From contig NC_086376.1 in assembly GCF_036588685.1 (NCBI RefSeq), positions 73,263,630 through 73,327,629 of the forward strand: a stretch of DNA of 64,000 nt, written 5' to 3'. The DNA comes from Mytilus trossulus. Lineage: Eukaryota. The notes under the pieces are model-generated. The model was not told the origin of the DNA and ran no database searches. It was given only the letters and a program-made list of their open reading frames with translations. The translations under genes were made by a program, and so were the position numbers. Below, in pieces: positions 17,021 through 52,659 of this stretch. The stretch's first letter is position 1; each line of letters opens with the position of its first letter.

Positions 17021-18910
17021 ATTTGTGTGTTTCCCCGTCCTGTATATTCTACTATTTGTGTTTTTCTCCGTCCTGTATATTATACCATTTATTCGTATTG
17101 TAGTCCTGTCATGAATTGGAGTCACTTTTATGTTTTATTTAATATTGACATAAAGCGGGAGTTGTGGCAAGCCACAAAATCAGGTTCAACCTACCATTTT
17201 TTCTTAACATGTCTTGTACCAAGTCAGGAAAACGGCCATTGTTATATTATAGTTCGTTTCTGTGTGTGTATGACATTTTAGTGTTGTATTTCCGTGGTGT
17301 CGTTATTCTCCTCTTATATTTGATGTGTTCCCTCAGCAGCGGTTTACTACTGTTGCCATTTTTTATTTCCCTTTTGTACCAACTTTCGCAATGCAATATG
17401 CAGTTATTTTACTCCTTTTTCGGATCTATTTGTAGGCTCTCGTAACATCATATCGACTAAGTCTTTTTTTAATTATAAATAGTGACAGGGACTCGGGAAG
17501 AGATATTACTGTAGTGACGATATCTTATAGTAAAACTCTGATAAAATTTACAACAGCTTTGCAGTTTGACGTTAACTATGTTACTAACCAAAGATAAGAT
17601 GACGTCGCCGTGTGACGTCGACCTTGAATACACTTTGACTTCCGATACGTAACCGATCCCGCGGTCTTCACGACAATAACCAATGGGAGAGGCCAAGTTC
17701 AAAATTATGTTGGTAGAAAAGACAGAAAAACAAGACAATGAGGATTAAGACCTTAATATAGTAATGGTTGATTGTTAACGTCAATTTTATGATTGACAAC
17801 ATATTCAATAGCTGGGTTTTGCACATTTGGTGGTCCGGATGAACGACACCAAACTGCAATGTTGAACAGATAATTATAGATGATTTGCTTTGTAACAAGC
17901 CGCTTTTTGACCCACCAAGTGATTCGGCCAAGTGCAAAAAAGTAATATTTACAGATGAAGGAACATCTCTTGACTTGTCTATTCTATTTTTTTCCGACAG
18001 TTGGATACATTTTTTGGACTTGTATTGTACATTAAACCCACCAAAAAAGTGACAAAAAAAAATCTGGGAAATGTTTTTGATGTGAGAAAACGTTATAAAA
18101 AACTAATCAATTTTTTAGATGTCTTAATTGTCAGTCTCTGTGACAACATTTCCTTTTATTTAGAATTGGACTTTTTATCGAAATCCGCTCTCTTAGTATA
18201 AAATATTACCCGGCAACATGAACTCAAAGATAACATAACACTGGTTTTTATAATTATTTTCTTGTTGAATTTATTTACAAAATGAGAGAGTACCAGACCA
18301 AATTGCAATGATAAATAATAAACATAAATATAGTTTAACCACCTCCAATGCACATGTGTACAAGTTAAACGTTGAACTATTTAAGGAAAGCTTAAAATCG
18401 AAAATGATTTACATGCATGCAAATTGTTTTTATTTTATTCTATTTTATTTTATTTGTGATTAAACAAACTGGTTGCCTCAATGGTTTGTATTACAGAAGT
18501 ATTTAAAAATAAGAAATATCTAACTAAACAACTTTGATTTACTCCAGCTGTTTAATAGGACTCCAGAATGATAAACACTGCGCTTATTGAAAGTAAAGTG
18601 AGTTTGTGTCAATACAAACTATGTGGTGTTTAACAAATAATAAAAACCTCAACAATAATATGGAACATTCAGAACAATCTATGGGGAAATAATGACAGCA
18701 TGCATTATGACAATTGCATCATTATAAAGCTGGTATTCGTACAATTACAGAACAGAAAATTAAGAAACGCCATAAAATGTTCTCCCACTCATTTTTACAA
18801 AACACAACGACGAATCTTCTCGAAGTTATGGAAGTAACAATAAATAACTCTTTAACATGAACAAATCAATGTCAAATGATAAACCTACTCGGAACATTAT
18901 TGAAAACACA

Positions 18911-20781
18911 TCAAAAGGTTGGCTGAGAAAGCATGTTTTGTTCACGTCCAGTTTGTCGGACCTTGCTAGTCGTGACCCATTGTAAAGTTTGTTTCTGAAA
19001 AGAAGCGTGTTCATGAATATCCTCTTCCCCACTATCGTAATGTTCGGCTGTCACGTGCTTCGATCCTGAATTTGTCTTATTTTTCAAAGTTTTCACATTT
19101 GATATGTTCTGGTCTTCAGATGAGTTGTTAGTCTCAGCTGTGTTTAAAGAATGTTTTATTGTCACTATTTGGCCTTCAATGCCAATTGTACTCTGTTTAT
19201 TTTCAGGATGAACTTGAAAAGATTTGTTATCGTCAATGTTAGAACGTTCCCCTGCGATTTGATTCTGCGCACTTTTCTTTGATAGCCTTTTTTTATGTCT
19301 TATTTTCTGTCGATCACCAGGATCACTTGACCACCCTGATTCTGAACTATTTGTTTTAACTTGTCCATCCACCATTTCTGGTGAGCTGAAAGATAATGTG
19401 TCTTCATTCAACCACAATAATCCTAAGGTATCTTGATATCTATTACAATCTTTCGCTTTTTGCAATGCTGTGCTAGTAGATGATTTGCCTGGAATATCGG
19501 CTATGTTATTTAAATCTAATATATCGAAGTGTCCAAATTCATTAAGCCGTCTGCCTATACTGTCTTTTTTAATTTCCTCTGCAGTTTTCTCTCTGAAATA
19601 ATTGTCTCCTCTTGAACCTGAATATTTTGTTACATTTTGGACATCTTTTAATAATTTACTTCCTGTATATCCGGTGGAAAAACGACTCTCGTTATTTTCG
19701 TCCAAATAACTTTCATTTTCGTCAATTTCAGATTTGATATCATTATACACTGATTCAGCAGTTAATCCTAGCCTACTAACTTCGTCAGAAATTGTATGTT
19801 GTTTATTATTTCTAGATTTGGAAGTCTGTGGAAACGAATTTACTCTTGGCCTGAAGGTTAAATTGGTTGTATCTACAATATATTTTTTTTAAGATGAAAT
19901 TACTACAGACCAAATTACCATTTAGCAAAAAATGCATGTAGAGCAAAAACAAAAATAGTATGATAACAGGGTACCAGAAGTTGTATGTTATATTTATTAC
20001 AGATGACTGTGTTCATAGTAGAACACAGTGCAGTCAACCGCACATTTAAATAAATTCACTTACCTTCATTTGATTTGTGTTGAAAAAAAATCAATAGCAA
20101 TCATACACCATATATACAGTTTTATATACACGGGTTAATATCCCTAGTGTGTGTCAAATTAAGATACACACAAGTTGCGCGTAAACAAAAACAAATTCTA
20201 TGTAGTAATCCTGGACATATTTTTATTTTTAACAAGTGACGACTGAGTTTGACCATTTGTTTTGATTTGGAAAATATATGACCACAGACTAAATGTGTAT
20301 AACTATACGTTAATCAATGTATTCAAAGGATTAAAGGATCAAAGAATTATTTGTGTGAAAAAATGAGCATACTGACCAATATAAGTTATATAGACATAAA
20401 AATAAGAATACAAAAATGTTAAAAAGCCCAAATATAGTCATGATAGTACGAAATTGAAAGAGCATTGAGGAGCAAAAATTCCTAAAAGATTTGCCAAATA
20501 CAGCTTTGTAATATATTCCTGAGGTAGAAATGGTGCATTTGTCAAAAATTCAACATCCAGCTAATGAGCAGAAAACAGTCAAAAACATATATAGTGTGTG
20601 TACCTTCGTTTCCGTCGGAAGTTATATCTGCTGTCTTTTCAATTGAAGAGAACAGATCAAAAGATCTAAGATACTTTTTGGAAAATGGCAGGTAATTTGG
20701 TCCGTCTTCCAAAGATGTACGTTGTCCATTAAATATAGGGACTTTACAGCAATGCAAGGCTTCATCCGAAGTTCTGTCCAT
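18911..20781 (-). CDS. Uncharacterised ~379-aa hydrophilic low-complexity (S/N/K/E/D-rich) protein, two coding exons
   Basis: Exon 20604-20788 (ATG at 20781, phase-1 donor GAAG/GT) joins in frame to exon 18911-19872 (acceptor ttgtag), which has 320 open codons to TGA. A possible upstream 47-nt exon lies at 21892-21938. No recognisable domain. Confidence 0.65.
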
Positions 20782-43539: not shown

Positions 43540-44102
43540 TAAGAACTAAGGTTTCAACTCCCTCAGGCAAAGTTGGCTTTAGATGAATTTGGCTATTTAT
43601 TTTAGGTATTTTTTGACATAAAGCTCTTCAACGGTTTCGGTACTTATACATCGTCGGATTTCAAATGTTTTGCTTTGAGCGTTCCCGATGAAGGTAAATC
43701 CAGAAAAGCGCTTCGGACGCAAGAAATTAATAACGTGTTGTTTTCAATATTTTACACCACTGGGTCGATACCTCTGCTGGTGGACTATCAGTCCCCGAGG
43801 GTATCATCAGCTCGTAGTCAGTATTTCGGTACTGACATGATTTAACAAACTTTACTAAAATTGTCCGTTTATAAATTTATAAATTATTAAGAAACTAAGG
43901 TTTCAACTCCCTCAGGCAAAGTTGGCTTTATATGAATTTGGCTATTTATTTTAGGTATTTTTTGACATACAGCTCTTCTACGGCTCGGTACTTATACATC
44001 TTCGGATTTCAAATGTTTGGCTTTGAGCGTTCCTGATGAAGGTAAATCCAGAAAAGCGCTTCGGACGCAAGAAATTAATAACGTGTTGTTTTCAATATTT
44101 TA
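43540..44102 (+). ncRNA. Retrozyme-like tandem array: 348-nt monomer (about 1.6 copies) delimited by two hammerhead motifs
   Basis: Near-identical direct repeat with period 348. Each copy has GCGTTC-C(T/C)GATGA-AGG(taaat)CCA-GAAA-AGCGCT-TC/GGACGC. Predicted cleavage after 43714 and 44062. Confidence 0.8.
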
Positions 44103-47100: not shown

Positions 47101-48453
47101 TAGCAACCATTACAACAGTATTAACTTACTGCATCGGATGCACATTTTGTCAATTAAGATCTCTTCGGTGATGATCGATGCCAAACTATCTGAATATCTT
47201 AACTTCTTTAAAAGAAATCTGTTTTAATAAAAGCTATGAAATATATGAGCTTTTTCTAAAGACCAATGAAGATATTTCACAATAAGATGCAACTTATCGC
47301 TAATTATTTATACACTAAGACATGGAAATGCATAAAACACAATGACATTTAAACCACTCCTATTCCGACTATCTAATTCTTTAAAACGATATGTTGAAAT
47401 GGTGTATGTCTCAAAAGTTCCTTTATTGTTTTTTCAGGGGGGTGGATCGTGACCCTTTGCTAGCAAAATGTAGAAATTTTTTATTTAATTGACCCCACTG
47501 CCTGAATAGTCCTCGTCACAATATTTATGAATTCCATCAAAGGAAAGTCGAAAATCGTGACTACCGGGTTTTATAAGCTTGGTGCAATTACCATAGGAAA
47601 ATTCACAAAAAAGGAAAAAACATTGAGAAAATCTTAGCAGGCGCCCAAATAACTGCCTAGTAACTTTAAATATATAAACCTCGTTCACCTAATGGGTTAG
47701 ATAATTTAACATGACCACGCCCACAGCATCATCTAAGTTCAGCTTTTCGTTATGTTTTTTCGTTCTTTTTTGTCTTTGTTACATCATTTTACTTACCTTT
47801 TGATAAAAGTGTTAAACAATTGTTTGACTTATATTTTGTTTTACTGTAATATACTTAATCTTTACATGTTCATATCAACCAGGGCACTGATTCATACAAA
47901 GATATTTTGTTCATTCATAAAAGAACCTGTGACAATCTTTATCTTTCATTTTATGTGTAATAGATTTATAAAACAATACTTCGTCATTTTGGGGCCTTTT
48001 ATAGCTGACTATATAATATATGCTTCGTTAATTTTTGAAGGCCGTACGGTGGCCTATAGTTGTTAATTTCAAATGCATTTAGTCGCTTGTAGAAATTTTT
48101 TTCCATAGCTCATTGGCAATAGAACCACATCTTCTTATTTTCATATTGTGTGAAAATATAAATCTGCTTGTTTTGTCTACAACATCCTTAGAAAGTTTTG
48201 CAAACGTTTGATTTAAAATTATGACCATATCAATGATAATTCAAATGAAAGTGTTTGGAAATATCAAAACATATCATATCAGCTGTAAAAGAGGGACGAA
48301 AAATACCAGAGGGACAGTCAAACTCATAAATCAACAATAAACTGACAACGCCATGGCTAAAAATGAAAAGGAAAAGGACAAAAAGACAAATAATAGAACA
48401 CATACCACAACATAGAAAACTAAAGAGTGTAAAATTAGTATGCAATACTTTTG

Positions 48454-48863
48454 TAATAGAGGTCGTATAAAAACGTATCAACCGTATCATAAACGTTGAC
48501 GTACAATCATCTTCAGATATACAAGAGGGACAAAAGATACCAAAGGGACAGTCAAACTCATAAATCTAAAACAAACTGACAACGCCATGGCTAAAAATGA
48601 AAAACTGTTATGTGATCCCGAGCTAAAGACTAATATAGTTTTTCCCTGTCACTCTGGTATCTTACGTCCCTCTTTTCCAACAATTTAGTCAGCTACGCAA
48701 TCAAATACTAGCAATTGAAAACAATCAGTTGCCCATTTGCATTATTGAAAGTATATACAAGTAAAGCTCGGGATCACATAATGTTTATTGGTAAATCTGC
48801 AAATGCGTATACGTCAACGTATCTGATACGATTTGTACGTCTGCAAATGACAGACCTCTATTA
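48454..48863. mobile_element. MITE with long imperfect TIRs and an inner inverted repeat, just 3' of the cGLR gene
   Basis: TAATAGAGGTC..CGTATCA..ACGTTGACGTA is mirrored at 48808-48863. Inner perfect IR TATGTGATCCCGAGCT (48609) / AGCTCGGGATCACATA (48765). Contains a short repeat insertion at 48521-48604. Confidence 0.7.
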
Positions 48864-49071
48864 ACACTTGTTTGAAATTCTCAATGAAGACGAAACGTGC
48901 GCCTGGCGTATCAAATTTTAAGCTTGGTACCATATAATCTTATTGTTTTTCTAATCCAAAAAAAAAAAATAACCTTTCATAAATATTATTGATGCAAAGT
49001 TATTCTGGGAAAAATAACATTATTTGATATTTAAGACTTCCCATCGACAGTACGAATTGCATCTGTTTGTA

Positions 49072-51968
49072 TCACTTCCGTCTTTTTATTGCTAAGTCAA
49101 GAAGGAGGTTCGTCATCATATCCAATGCTTTAATATAGGGATGCTCCATGTACTCGTCACGGACTTCATAGCTGTCAGGGAATGCGACGGTTGGACGGCA
49201 ATAAACGAATGCACAGTTTTCAGTAGCGAACCAAGTTTTCAGTCTATGTAATATTTTCAGTGCCCAAATGTGAATATAACCAGTTCTATTTCTTAATGAA
49301 CACGCTAGATTGTACCTCATTAGTCGTAATGCTATTTCGTGACTTGGTGTATAGCAGCTATGAGATACCATTTGGTCATTAAGAAGACCATACGACAGAT
49401 GTGGGTCGAGTTCAAAGAACAAAGCATTCTTCAACATATATGATGTAATAATTTCGGGACTGCAAAATGATCCTGAATCACAGAAACTCCGCAAAGACTT
49501 TATCAATTTATATGCATCTTTTACTTCTGTCATTAGCCGCATTAGTATACATCTCTCTACATTTAGGAACGACAGACGAGCAAATTCGCTCTTTCGGCAA
49601 ATTACATGCCATTGATATTCCCTATGGCTAATAAAGTTTGTAACCGGAGAGGGAATCAAGTTTTGGATTACTTCAGGTATGTGTTGTTTAACAATTACAG
49701 GTACTAAATCAATATTTATGTTCAGATCTCGTGCTTCCAGTCCTATCCATTTTAATCGTAGGGGTGCAGTGAGAGAGCTCTCCACGACAAGATTTGTTTG
49801 TACCCATTCTACAGATTTTGCAATTGGAAGAACATTCCAATAAAACGGTGAATCTTTCCAAAAATCATTCGAATTGAGTACTGTATAAATGTAGGAATTA
49901 AATTTTTCGTAGATATTCCAGCTTAATGATTCCCCACTATGTACAATGTCTGTATCATTGTCTCTTTTCACGGTGATATCTTTACGAATATCTTTTATTG
50001 TCACTTCATTTGCTTGCTCAAAGGTATCGAAATAAAACCAAGGACTTAAATGTTTTAAATGAAACTGAAAGTCAAATTCATCAAGTGGTAGAATTTTTGT
50101 TTCCTCACTTATACTTCCTGCTAATTCTATCTCCGATTGAAAAATTTTATCGATTTCAGTCAAGTGCTCTGATATCTTATTAACCAATTTCTTGACATCT
50201 TCAAATATAGTGCGTTCAATGTTACTCATGATTAATGGTCCACAGTTATGATCATGCAGTAAAAGATCTACTAGATTTGCACCTTTTAAATCTTCTCTCT
50301 TGACATCTGTTGATTCCCAATACACAGATTCTTTCTCATATAATATGGTACTTCCATTTGCCCTGCATGTCTTGCAACACGAATATGGCAGCCCATTTTC
50401 TTGTAGTGGTTCTTTATTATATGCACATTTAAAATGCTGGTCCATCAATACTGCATTTGTTGATTCCCAATACACAGATTCTCTCTCATATAATATGGTA
50501 CTTCCATTTGCCCTGCATGTCTTGCAACACGAATATGGCAGCTCATTTTCTTGTAGTGGTTCTTTATTATATGCACATTTAAAATGCTGGTCCATCAATA
50601 CTGCATTCGTTAATATGTTAGAGGAGTCATAATCCCGAAGTGGTTTCCCTCGGTTATCGACAACATTCATATCAAATCCAAAAACATCCATGTAATTCAA
50701 TGCTGCAGTGTTGTTTTCAAATAAAGATAAGTGTTGGACACGTCTTCCGTAATTGTCTTGTTCATCTAAATCCTTCTTATCTATGATTTCAGATAGCAAT
50801 TTTAATGCAGACAATTCCTCTTCCTCATTTTTTATCTTGTAATTTCTCGAAGGATGTAAAACAGAATAATGTAAACAAGTCCTTCCAAATGTATCTCTGA
50901 CAGATGGTTGACCTCCTATAGTCAAAAGAAACTTCAACAAACGTGTAAATCTAAACCAACTAGCATAATGTAATATTGTACGACCATGTAAATCGGTTTG
51001 GTTACGGTCAAGTCCATATTTGGATAAAATTTCAACCTTTGTTATGATATCTGTTTGCATTTTTTCTTTGTCCAATCAGAAAGGCCTCGAACCAACAATC
51101 CGTGTATCGGAGGCAGTGGTAATGCACAGCATTTTGTTGATAACTTAATCTTAGGAGAACATCTTTCCATAAACATCTTGAGTTCTTCAGGTGTCAAAAG
51201 TAACAATAATTTATGAAAAGCTGTCACGATTCCTTGTGGTTCTGATATATTAATGTCCGCATTATGTTTTACTAACAACAGCACTATATCGAGACTCGTA
51301 TTACTTCCCTGTAAACAATGAGAGTATAACAAAGGTGTAAAGTCATCATCATCTCTACAATTTGCATCTGCTCCGAAAGACAAAAACAGAGATAGTAGAG
51401 GAAGATTAGCTGTTTCCATGGCCCAAAGCAATGGTCGATGTTCACTGTCACCGTTTGGGTTGGTATGATACGTTTGTATAAGTTCCCGAGCAAATTCTAT
51501 GATATCGGTTTGTGAAATATTGCCAACTTCATCACTTCCTCGAAGTCGACAAAGTTTACACAGAAAATGATTTCTGTAAGTGTTTACTTTCTGGCTAGTC
51601 TCATTTTTTGTCATTTCTAACCAACTTCTTATCTTATTGAGTTGATTGTATTGTCGGGGAAAACCTACTGTAAAGCATTTATTGTTTTGTTCTTGATCTG
51701 CATAAGGAATAATTTTTTGCAGAGGACTTTTATAACAATTTTCGTACAAATTAATTTCAGATGCATATGGTAAAAGTAAGCTCCATATTTCATCTACAAC
51801 TTTTTGATCAGCAGCCATATGCAGGATAGTTTTAAAGCCTCTTATCCTTGTATTTACTAGTTTTTCTTTAGTATTGTCTTGTAATGATAGAAGTTTTTCT
51901 TTGCATCCCTCAGTATCATTTTGAGTAACTAATGAGGCGAACGTCTGTAGGTCTGTCTTTGTCGACAT
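49072..51968 (-). CDS. Ankyrin-repeat / cGAS-like receptor (Mab-21 nucleotidyltransferase, cGLR), about 965 aa, split by one frameshift near 51060
   Basis: Ankyrin motifs: KTILHMAA, RPLLWAM..GADAN..DDDFTPL, ADIN, GRTILHYA, GRTCLHYS, GRRVQHLS, DNRGKP. NTase motif AGSISEETKILPLDEFDF, third acid in INIDLVP, and Mab-21 C-lobe motifs RLSFLNVER, YKLIK and SYMLKNALF. A splice acceptor at 51999-52000 implies a 5'-UTR intron. Confidence 0.88.
50308..50607 (-). repeat. In-frame 150-bp tandem duplication (2 x 50 aa) inside the cGLR CDS
   Basis: NAVLMDQHFKCAYNKEPLQEN(E/G)LPYSCCKTCRANGSTILYE(R/K)ESVYWEST occurs twice. Confidence 0.95.
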
Positions 51969-52659
51969 AGTTCTAGGTCAGAGAAGGAAGGTTAAAACCT
52001 AAAAGAACGCAAATGATTAAATTTAGTGTTAATCATAAATTGTTATCGTCGTTTTTTCTTTAGCAACTATTTTTTTACGTGTTTCAACGAAAGTTGCATT
52101 TGCAAATCAGCATTTCCCAACATTAACAATTTTTTAAAAGAACAGAATGATATATATTTGTATATGATGAAAAGGTTAAGTTATTATACAATTTATTTCA
52201 TTCATTTCTCTCTATCCAGCTTGAAGAAAATTTACCTGTAATCATAAATCTTTATTCTGTTTGTAATTATTACATTTAGGTGCATTTCCTATCTGTCCAT
52301 CACATTAATGAAAATGAATAATGTATGTAGATTGATTAGCATTTCAAGTGTAGCTGAATATTGCCACTATTAATAATGTGAGAATAATTTAATTTTAATA
52401 TATAAAGAAAACAAATTTACCATATAAACATGATAAACTTCGTATTGTATTGTCGTTAATACATCCGGTTCACATTCTTATAACAAGTATAATATTTCCG
52501 GTATTGTGTATCTAGCACAATACATAACAAATGACTAAATACATTAGGCTGAGGATATTATATTTGTATAGACGTGTATGTGTAAATTCATTTTGCACAT
52601 GTATATTTGAAATATCTTCAATATGTTGCAGTATGACATATCTACTTACAGTTGTTTCA

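What the first reader, a model, noticed from the sequence alone, without database searches (positions are those of the whole stretch)
49072..51968. Ankyrin-repeat-fused cGAS-like receptor with an intact catalytic triad
Seen: about 450 aa of ankyrin-repeat region, a Cys/His linker, then a full Mab-21/cGAS-type NTase. GS-x11-EFD parallels cGAS GSYYEHVKISAPNEFD, IDLVP gives the third acid, and RLSF..E, KLIK and SYxLK follow. The segment between RLSF and KLIK is too short to hold the vertebrate zinc thumb. Known: cGLRs make cyclic-dinucleotide messengers for STING and are expanded in bivalves. Inference: the ANK array may sense a protein or other non-DNA ligand, or autoinhibit the enzyme, making this a candidate innate-immune sensor of unknown ligand and product.
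Basis: partly seen in the sequence, partly recalled or inferred. Interest (0 to 1): 0.85.

Follow-up and report, generated by a model that had tools for sequence, protein, structure and literature searches.

The report
Frameshifted mussel ankyrin–cGAS-like receptor gene
This is a mussel (Mytilus) gene that joins about a dozen ankyrin repeats to a cGAS-like signalling enzyme with intact catalytic residues. This domain layout is already catalogued in animals, and the copy in this assembly is broken by a 13-base deletion that four other public samples do not carry.

Summary
On the minus strand, 51968-49072 encodes an N-terminal ankyrin solenoid, a disordered linker and a cGAS/Mab-21-type nucleotidyltransferase.

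- **Fold and active site:** The AlphaFold2 model of the C-terminal 388 aa (pLDDT 85) superposes on mouse cGAS at Z 24.3, 3.2 Å over 304 residues. GS-x11-ExD and the third Asp are invariant in all subfamily homologues. There is no zinc thumb.
- **Frameshift:** The reading frame is split into a 308-aa and a 667-aa ORF by a 13-nt deletion at 51073/51074. All four public runs laid on the locus carry the missing 13 nt. Full-length 907-913-aa forms exist: named M. edulis and M. coruscus proteins and an unnamed assembly-derived one.
- **Transcription:** One contig, from a run guessed to be RNA, is spliced across a 422-nt 5'UTR intron.
- **Family:** It belongs to a divergent mussel clade that scores below Pfam's Mab-21 threshold. 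It is significantly related to ANK-Mab-21 proteins that pass the threshold. The genome holds at least 93 Mab-21 loci and several STING loci.
- **Likely ligand:** The enzyme domain has pI 6.1, which argues against nucleic-acid sensing.

Verdict: a new member of a known kind, with ligand and product unknown. Interest is moderate, not 0.85.

The parts
52421..52442 (-). 3' end of a non-coding first exon (5'UTR). The exon ends at 52421 and is followed by GTAAAT.
   Evidence: The 21 loose letters of a contig from run X5 match 52422-52442 exactly, with 0 chance matches in shuffles.
51999..52420 (-). 5'UTR intron of 422 nt, GT...AG, with a polypyrimidine tract before the AG.
   Evidence: The spliced X5 contig joins 52421 to 51998. 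The donor and acceptor were read.
49072..51998 (-). Single coding exon. ATG at 51968, final stop at 49074-49072.
   Evidence: The M. edulis protein P0001 aligns collinearly with no intron.
51042..51968 (-). ORF A, 308 aa: the N-terminal ankyrin repeats, ending in 10 out-of-frame residues and a premature stop.
   Evidence: It is identical to a 308-aa protein held in NCBI/UniRef (P0063).
51073..51074 (-). Frameshift site. 13 nt are missing here, which in other copies encode the rest of ...SD-SIYR-MDKE...
   Evidence: tblastn switches frame at 51075 and P0001 residues 299-302 are missing. All four runs have 13 nt inserted behind 51073.
49072..51075 (-). ORF B, 667 aa: the last ~3-4 ankyrin repeats, the linker and the NTase. 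The first in-frame ATG is at 51060.
50626..51968 (-). Ankyrin-repeat solenoid region, ~450 aa and about 12 repeats once the frames are considered together.
   Evidence: Pfam ANK hits. The orthologue model is helical-repeat over residues 1-450 and matches AnkB/ankyrin-1 solenoids.
50304..50603 (-). In-frame tandem duplication (2 x 150 nt, 98% identical) inside the disordered, poorly conserved linker.
   Evidence: It is absent from the M. edulis and M. californianus proteins. The linker has pLDDT 25-33.
49075..50238 (-). cGAS/Mab-21-type nucleotidyltransferase domain (388 aa modelled).
   Evidence: AF2 pLDDT 85.3, pTM 0.85. Foldseek gives cGAS at E 5e-11. VIA-align gives Z 24.3, rmsd 3.2 Å over 304 aa. 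Pfam Mab-21 scores only 15.5 bits but spans the full profile.
50071..50118 (-). GS-x11-ExD motif: G320 and S321, with catalytic E333 (50079-50077) and D335 (50073-50071).
   Evidence: Read. Invariant in alignments A1 and A2. It aligns with GSYYERSKVGEPDEFD of cGLR1 8gjy.
49708..49710 (-). Third catalytic Asp (D456, in IDLVP).
   Evidence: Invariant in the subfamily. It aligns with the DLVPAI of Cv-cGLR1 8gjw.

Best explanation
The locus is a Mytilus gene with one non-coding exon and one coding exon. It encodes an ankyrin-repeat-fused cGAS-like receptor (ANK-cGLR): about 12 ankyrin repeats, a disordered variable linker, and a bilobed Mab-21/cGAS nucleotidyltransferase with a complete GS/E-x-D/D active site and no zinc thumb.

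It belongs to a divergent clade so far seen only in mussel-type sequences. That clade sits inside the very large bivalve cGLR expansion.

Shown:
- Fold, catalytic residues and architecture.
- Spliced-transcript evidence.
- Full-length 907-913-aa forms: named M. edulis and M. coruscus proteins and an unnamed assembly-derived one.
- STING genes in the same genome.

Inferred:
- The enzyme makes a cyclic di- or oligonucleotide second messenger for a STING-type receptor.
- Because the catalytic domain is acidic, it is switched on by something other than dsDNA or dsRNA.
- The conserved ankyrin solenoid acts as the partner- or ligand-binding module, or as an autoinhibitory module.

The allele in this assembly carries a 13-nt deletion that truncates the protein after 308 aa. 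It is therefore a null or severely altered allele, or less probably an assembly error. At best it could yield an N-terminally shortened product from the internal ATG at 51060.
For: - **Fold:** pLDDT 85.3. The top Foldseek hits are all cGAS (E 5e-11) plus Cv-cGLR1. VIA-align gives Z 24.3, 3.2 Å over 304 aa, covering model residues 1-384.
- **Sequence links:** phmmer links the domain to P0014 (E 1.7e-13) and P0015 (1e-12) in a library of 1.84 billion proteins. Of 46 such relatives, 37 hit Pfam Mab-21 and 33 hit ANK at E<=0.001.
- **Paralogues in the same genome:** L003-L010 are ANK+Mab-21 in single long ORFs, and seven of the eight exceed Pfam's Mab-21 cut-off.
- **Profile search:** the A2 profile hits cGLR1 at 8.5e-29 and cGAS at ~3e-26 in the PDB.
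- **Active site:** the catalytic residues are invariant across subfamily members that share 33-53% identity.
- **Clade:** the subfamily forms a clade with SH-aLRT support of 100 on a long stem.
- **Frameshift:**. All four runs carry the 13 nt.
- **Full-length proteins:** XP_071169787.1 and CAG2243076.1 (M. edulis), CAC5425843.1 (M. coruscus) and an unnamed 907-aa protein from a Logan assembly.
- **Spliced contig:**
- **RNA-like depth in run X4:** gene depth is 45-257 and the adjacent high-copy repeat is at 45. In DNA run X1 the repeat is at 18,424 against ~40 for the gene.
- **STING:** ligand-binding-domain exons are present.
- **Charge:** pI 6.14 against more than 8.5 for nucleic-acid-sensing cGLRs.
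- **Domain conservation:** ANK and NTase are equally conserved and the linker is hypervariable.
Against: - Pfam Mab-21 is below its gathering score for this protein (15.5 against 24.1 bits). phmmer against PDB sequences finds nothing.
- The strong PDB profile hit uses a profile that also contains canonical paralogues.
- No enzymatic activity, product, ligand or STING coupling has been tested.
- The window's own allele is frameshifted. One DNA run (X1) shows a different 1-nt deletion at 49750 inside the NTase, before D456. The gene may therefore be dispensable.
- The labels 'RNA?' and 'DNA?' on the runs are guesses made by the tool.
- The source individual's reads were not identified, so an assembly error at 51073/4 is not excluded.
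Confidence: 0.8

Rival explanations
1. The gene is decaying into a pseudogene in this species group. The ANK-cGLR is dispensable and accumulates independent loss-of-function alleles.
For: - The 13-nt frameshift in the assembly.
- A different 1-nt deletion at 49750, in an A4 run, in DNA run X1.
- M. galloprovincialis models VDI40124.1 and VDI40123.1 stop at ~490 aa, in the linker.
- The M. californianus model has only 515 aa.
Against: - Full-length 907-913-aa forms exist: named M. edulis (two assemblies) and M. coruscus proteins and an unnamed Logan-derived one.
- All four runs are intact at 51073, and three of four are intact at 49750.
- The catalytic residues are invariant down to 33% identity.
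- A spliced transcript was seen.
- Apart from the one deletion, both window ORFs are fully open.
Confidence: 0.15
2. The 13-nt deletion is an assembly or consensus artefact, and the source animal has an intact gene.
For: None of the four laid runs, including two labelled with the same organism as the best DNA holder, shows the deletion.
Against: - A 13-nt loss in non-repetitive coding sequence is not a typical long-read consensus error. It lies next to, not within, the short A-run.
- None of the laid runs is demonstrably the source individual. X1 differs by about 1%.
- Mussel genomes are highly polymorphic. This last point is from my own knowledge.
Confidence: 0.2
3. It is a nucleic-acid sensor like cGAS, Drosophila cGLR1 or oyster Cv-cGLR1. 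The ankyrin repeats serve only as a scaffold for downstream signalling.
For: The closest solved structures are the dsDNA- and dsRNA-activated enzymes. Most characterised cGLRs respond to nucleic acids.
Against: - The NTase domain has pI 6.14, and subfamily members are mostly 5-7.7. Nucleic-acid sensors are above 8.5.
- There is no zinc thumb.
- The N-terminal spine helix is not basic. This is read directly from the sequence.
Confidence: 0.12
4. It is a non-catalytic Mab-21-like protein similar to MAB21L1/2, or an NTase with a different chemistry such as 2'-5' oligoadenylate synthesis or protein nucleotidylation.
For: The family profile also hits MAB21L1 (2e-12) and MB21D2 (1.8e-11). The product is unknown.
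Against: The full GS/E/D/D set is invariant, which points to a catalytically competent enzyme. The best structural matches are cGAS and cGLR1. Alternative chemistry cannot be excluded by computation.
Confidence: 0.08

Closest known systems
ANK-fused cGAS-like receptors catalogued by Li et al. 2023 (doi 10.1101/2023.02.22.529553; Fig. 1C/S2A, Table S2)
   Same: The architecture is the same: ankyrin repeats plus a cGLR NTase core with a putative active site. It is enriched in bivalves and cnidarians. Mytilus galloprovincialis is listed with 218 cGLRs and 9 STINGs.
   Different: - This clade falls below Pfam's Mab-21 threshold.
- Its orthologues' accessions were not found in the held supplementary tables. 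Those tables are truncated, so this is inconclusive.
- I found no paper describing the function of any ANK-fused cGLR.
Vertebrate cGAS (e.g. mouse cGAS, PDB 4k9b)
   Same: It has the same bilobed NTase fold over the whole catalytic domain (Z 24.3). It also shares GS-x11-ExD, the third Asp, and the RLSF...E and SYxLK motifs.
   Different: Identity is 17-18%. It has no zinc thumb, an acidic rather than basic domain, and an N-terminal ankyrin solenoid instead of a disordered basic tail.
Crassostrea virginica Cv-cGLR1 (PDB 8gjw/8gjy family)
   Same: It is a bivalve cGLR with the same fold (Z 22.3). These are the best PDB profile hits (8.5e-29 and 2e-27).
   Different: Cv-cGLR1 is a stand-alone, basic enzyme activated by nucleic acid. 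This protein is ANK-fused and acidic.
Human MB21D2 and other orphan cGLRs
   Same: They also have a predicted complete active site and no known activating ligand.
   Different: The sequence relationship is distant, and MB21D2 has no ankyrin domain.

Membership tests
cGAS-like receptor (cGLR) / Mab-21 NTase superfamily | Bilobed cGAS/Mab-21 nucleotidyltransferase fold | tested here: met
   The AF2 model has pLDDT 85.3. Foldseek top hits are cGAS at E 5e-11. VIA-align gives Z 24.3, rmsd 3.2 Å over 304 aa.
cGAS-like receptor (cGLR) / Mab-21 NTase superfamily | Catalytic GS loop plus the [E/D]-x-[E/D] ... [E/D] metal-binding triad | tested here: met
   G320, S321, E333, D335 and D456 are invariant in the subfamily. 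They align with the cGLR1 motifs.
cGAS-like receptor (cGLR) / Mab-21 NTase superfamily | Pfam PF03281 (Mab-21) at its gathering score | tested here: not met
   It scores 15.5 bits against a 24.1 cut-off, although it spans profile positions 3-195 of 197. Homology is instead established through relatives such as P0014 (E 1.7e-13), which scores 52 bits on Mab-21. Seven of the eight more distant paralogues in the same genome also pass.
cGAS-like receptor (cGLR) / Mab-21 NTase superfamily | Ligand-dependent synthesis of a nucleotide second messenger | not testable with these tools
   This needs recombinant protein and TLC or LC-MS.
cGAS-like receptor (cGLR) / Mab-21 NTase superfamily | A STING-type receptor in the same genome | tested here: met
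   PF15009 exon matches over the cut-off were found at four loci on contigs C3 and C14. Li et al. list 8-9 STINGs in Mytilus species.
Vertebrate-type cGAS (orthologue) | Zinc-thumb (H-x5-CC-x6-C) insertion between the RLSF...E strand/helix and the following helix | tested here: not met
   Only 8 residues (MRLMTEVK) lie between ERCIL and DAYKLIK.
Ankyrin-repeat proteins | Tandem 33-residue helix-turn-helix repeats forming a solenoid | tested here: met
   Pfam Ank_2, Ank_4, Ank and Ank_3 are above their cut-offs in ORF A; Ank_2 and Ank_4 are above theirs in ORF B. Residues 1-450 of the orthologue model match AnkB R13-24 and ankyrin-1.
Intact protein-coding gene (in this assembly) | An uninterrupted reading frame from the ATG to the family's normal C-terminus | tested here: not met
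   A 13-nt deletion at 51073/4 causes a stop at 51044-51042.

The most novel reading that the evidence does not exclude
This conserved mussel clade of ANK-cGLRs could be a cGLR class switched on by a protein or another non-nucleic-acid ligand. The ~12-repeat ankyrin solenoid would capture the ligand, or be released from the NTase on binding.

The gene could also be kept in mussel populations as a presence/absence-like polymorphism of functional and frameshifted alleles. No ANK-fused cGLR with a described function turned up in my literature searches, so this would be the first with a tractable sensing mechanism.
Probability: 0.15. Interest if true: 0.75.

Novelty: new member of a known kind. 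Interest (0 to 1): 0.35.

Why it matters
cGLRs are a large family of animal pattern-recognition receptors, and the ligands of most of them are unknown. ANK-fused members are obvious candidates for sensing something other than nucleic acid.

This locus adds three things:
- A well-defined, transcribed clade that domain annotation misses: none of the seven homologues has a Mab-21 hit on record, and the named ones are labelled 'uncharacterized', 'hypothetical' or 'unnamed'.
- Natural full-length orthologues that can be expressed directly, so no sequence needs repairing.
- A hint of segregating loss-of-function alleles.

It does not reveal a new architecture or mechanism.

Tried and rejected
The M. 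edulis orthologue's DNA and neighbourhood could not be fetched, so no dN/dS was computed.
- **phmmer against PDB sequences**, using the single domain, found nothing.
- **A close-family-only profile against the PDB** (A3) was swamped by ankyrin hits, because the ANK columns entered the profile. It therefore gave no independent test of the NTase.
There is no evidence either way.
- **The full-length orthologue model** has pTM 0.72. That could mean the domains pack together, but no PAE or coordinates were available, so I make no claim.
- **'Cys/His linker' as a zinc site** is rejected. It is not conserved and is predicted disordered.
- **Presence of the 150-nt duplication in other individuals** is unresolved. 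Contigs break at the repeat.
- **Catalogue check** of Li et al. for this gene's orthologues is inconclusive, because the held tables are truncated.
- **The two ORFs were never joined.** Each was searched separately, and the natural intact orthologue P0001 was used for the full-length model.
- **A 'TA' insertion at 50061 in run X1** was not interpreted. It probably reflects a clustered substitution, HLKHL in the window against HLIYL in M. edulis.
Full report
**What is in the sequence**

On the minus strand there are two long ORFs, 51968..51042 (308 aa, ATG start) and 51075..49072 (667 aa). They overlap by 34 nt in different frames. They are two of only three ORFs of at least 180 aa in the 64-kb window. 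The window is AT-rich (about 31% G+C), as expected of animal DNA.

Pfam finds ankyrin repeats in both ORFs.
- GS-x11-EFD (LAGSISEETKILPLDEFD)
- IDLVP
- ARLSFLNVE
- DAYKLIK
- ITSYMLKNAL

Only eight residues separate ERCIL from DAYKLIK. The vertebrate cGAS zinc thumb cannot be present.

**The frameshift**

The closest database protein is an uncharacterised 911-aa Mytilus edulis protein (P0001, XP_071169787.1), 92% identical over the NTase domain.

- tblastn of P0001 on the window aligns residues 1-298 in one frame, ending at nt 51075. Residues 303-909 align in another frame, starting at the same nucleotide. Residues 299-302 (SIYR) are lost. That amounts to a 13-nt deletion.
- More distant homologues all have residues at this position, so the deletion is the derived state.
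- Contigs of four public runs were laid on the locus: two guessed DNA and two guessed RNA, under three organism labels. All four have 13 nt inserted behind 51073. Read on the minus strand, this restores ...SD-SIYR-MDKE....
- The 308-aa truncated product is on record in NCBI/UniRef exactly as encoded here (P0063). The 662-aa product from the internal ATG at 51060 is not on record.
- I could not identify reads from the assembled individual. The best DNA holder differs by about 1%. An assembly error is therefore not excluded, but it is the less likely reading.

**Gene structure and expression**

A 525-nt contig of run X5 lies on 51496-51999. It continues with 21 letters that match 52422-52442 exactly. 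The genomic sequence shows ATG|GTAAAT at 52421/52420 and TTCTTTTAG|G at 51999/51998.

The contig is therefore spliced across a 422-nt GT-AG intron in the 5'UTR. That supports an RNA origin for it, and shows that the whole coding region is one exon.

In run X4 the gene has word depth 45-257 and the adjacent high-copy repeat at 48800-48916 has depth 45. In DNA run X1 the repeat stands at 18,424 against about 40 for the gene. X4 therefore behaves like RNA. Both of these runs carry the intact 13 nt.

**Identity of the C-terminal domain**

Sequence evidence:
- The single-sequence Pfam match to Mab-21 is sub-threshold (E 0.019, 15.5 bits against 24.1). It does span profile positions 3-195 of 197.
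- phmmer against PDB sequences finds nothing.
- An exhaustive phmmer search of 1.84 billion representatives returns 56 proteins. Only six are below 1e-30.
- The next tier includes P0014 at 1.7e-13 and P0015 at 1e-12. Of 46 such relatives, 37 hit Pfam Mab-21, 17 Mab-21_C and 33 ankyrin families at E<=0.001.
- A six-frame search of the window's own 1.3-Gb genome finds one 37%-identical paralogue (L002) and eight more distant ones. Most are ANK plus Mab-21 in single long ORFs, and seven of the eight exceed Pfam's Mab-21 cut-off.
- A profile built from these sequences hits cGAS-like receptor 1 (8gjy 8.5e-29, 8gjw 2e-27), cGAS (~3e-26), MAB21L1 and MB21D2. The GS...DEFD and DLVP motifs are in register.

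Structure evidence:
- AlphaFold2 on the 388-aa domain gives pLDDT 85.3 and pTM 0.85.
- The top Foldseek hits are all cGAS (E 5e-11), together with oyster Cv-cGLR1.
- VIA-align gives Z 24.3, rmsd 3.2 Å over 304 residues. Model residues 1-384 cover mouse cGAS 155-502. Cv-cGLR1 scores Z 22.3.

Conservation: G, S, E, D and D are invariant in all ten subfamily members at 33-92% identity, and in nearly all paralogues.

**The N-terminal domain and linker**

The intact M. edulis orthologue was modelled whole (pLDDT 77, pTM 0.72).
- Residues 1-450 are helical repeats. They align with 12-repeat ankyrin solenoids: AnkB R13-24 at TMt 0.69 and ankyrin-1 C-terminal half at TMt 0.75.
- Residues 453-510 are disordered (pLDDT 25-50).
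- Residues 515-911 are the NTase.

The linker is the least conserved part, at 9-18% identity among distant homologues. ANK and NTase are both at 30-53%.

In the window the linker holds an in-frame 2 x 150-nt tandem duplication (50304-50603, 98% identical). The M. edulis and M. californianus proteins lack it. Its Cys and His residues are not conserved, so it is not a zinc module.

**Family context**

- In a quick maximum-likelihood tree the ten subfamily members form a clade with SH-aLRT support of 100 on a long stem (1.65 changes per site).
- Full-length 907-913-aa forms exist: named M. edulis proteins from two assemblies, an M. coruscus protein, and an unnamed protein from a Logan assembly. 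The M. galloprovincialis and M. californianus models are shorter.
- The genome has at least 93 Mab-21 matches over Pfam's cut-off. Most lie in single long ORFs, some in tandem arrays.
- STING ligand-binding-domain exons occur at four loci.
- Li et al. 2023 (doi 10.1101/2023.02.22.529553) already describe ANK-cGLR fusions as one of the recurrent architectures. They list 218 cGLRs and 9 STINGs for M. galloprovincialis, and 119 and 8 for M. coruscus.
- Another first-stage note of this scan flags an intact ANK-cGLR elsewhere in this genome. That fits.
- I found no paper on the function of any ANK-fused cGLR.

**How it most likely works**

Shown: a catalytically complete cGAS-like NTase is tethered by a flexible linker to a conserved ankyrin solenoid. 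There is spliced-transcript evidence, and STING receptors are present in the genome.

Inferred:
- The enzyme makes a cyclic nucleotide signal for STING.
- Its domain pI of 6.14 is in the range Li et al. associate with non-nucleic-acid ligands (subfamily mostly 5-7.7). Nucleic-acid sensors are above 8.5.
- The ankyrin array is therefore the best candidate for the ligand- or partner-binding element, or for an autoinhibitory one.
- ANK and NTase are equally conserved. That argues for a conserved partner or an intramolecular contact, not a rapidly evolving recognition surface.

The attempt to test ANK-NTase docking was not run by the tool.

**Loss-of-function variation**

Besides the assembly's 13-nt deletion, DNA run X1 has a contig with a 1-nt deletion at 49750. 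It lies in an A4 run upstream of D456. Run X2 has an in-frame 18-nt deletion at 49195.

These hints of segregating disabled alleles fit a dispensable, polymorphic immune gene. They rest on single contigs, and a second nearby copy in some genomes cannot be excluded.

**Verdict**

The copy in this assembly is frameshifted. The architecture is already known and is abundant in this genome. Ligand and product remain unknown.

It is a new, divergent member of a known kind. Interest is about 0.35.

Noticed in passing
window 48800-49033: A very high-copy repeat lies about 40 nt downstream of the gene's stop codon. Its word depth is 18,424 and 2,566 in DNA run X1, against about 40 over the gene. Many loose ends show that it is dispersed in the genome.
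   Followed up: partly
window 48279-48851: A cluster of direct repeats (91 nt, 90% identical) and inverted repeats (34-61 nt, 74-85% complementary) lies downstream of the gene. It looks like nested MITE-type elements.
   Followed up: no
window 49750 (run X1) and 49195 (run X2): Other individuals carry their own indels in the NTase coding region. X1 has a 1-nt deletion in an A4 run, which shifts the frame. X2 has an 18-nt in-frame deletion.
   Followed up: partly
window 49091-49098: Small indels of 1-4 nt in several runs change the last few codons. This matches the different C-terminal tails of the window protein (…LLLDLAIKRRK) and the M. edulis protein (…LLLSK).
   Followed up: no
G000:C8:15512499-15582880: A tandem array of at least ten stand-alone Mab-21/cGLR genes sits within 70 kb. 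Their open frames are about 330-430 aa, and a few contain stops. These are the strongest Pfam Mab-21 matches in the genome after one locus on C14.
   Followed up: no
relatives P0014 and three others: Some ANK-Mab-21 relatives are very long (over 2,200 aa) and also carry a MYND zinc finger.
   Followed up: no
window 18911-19750 (minus strand): A 279-aa ORF with no Pfam match. It is the only other ORF of at least 180 aa in the window.
   Followed up: partly
window 43540-44102: An earlier first-reader note calls this a retrozyme-like locus. I did not examine it.
   Followed up: no
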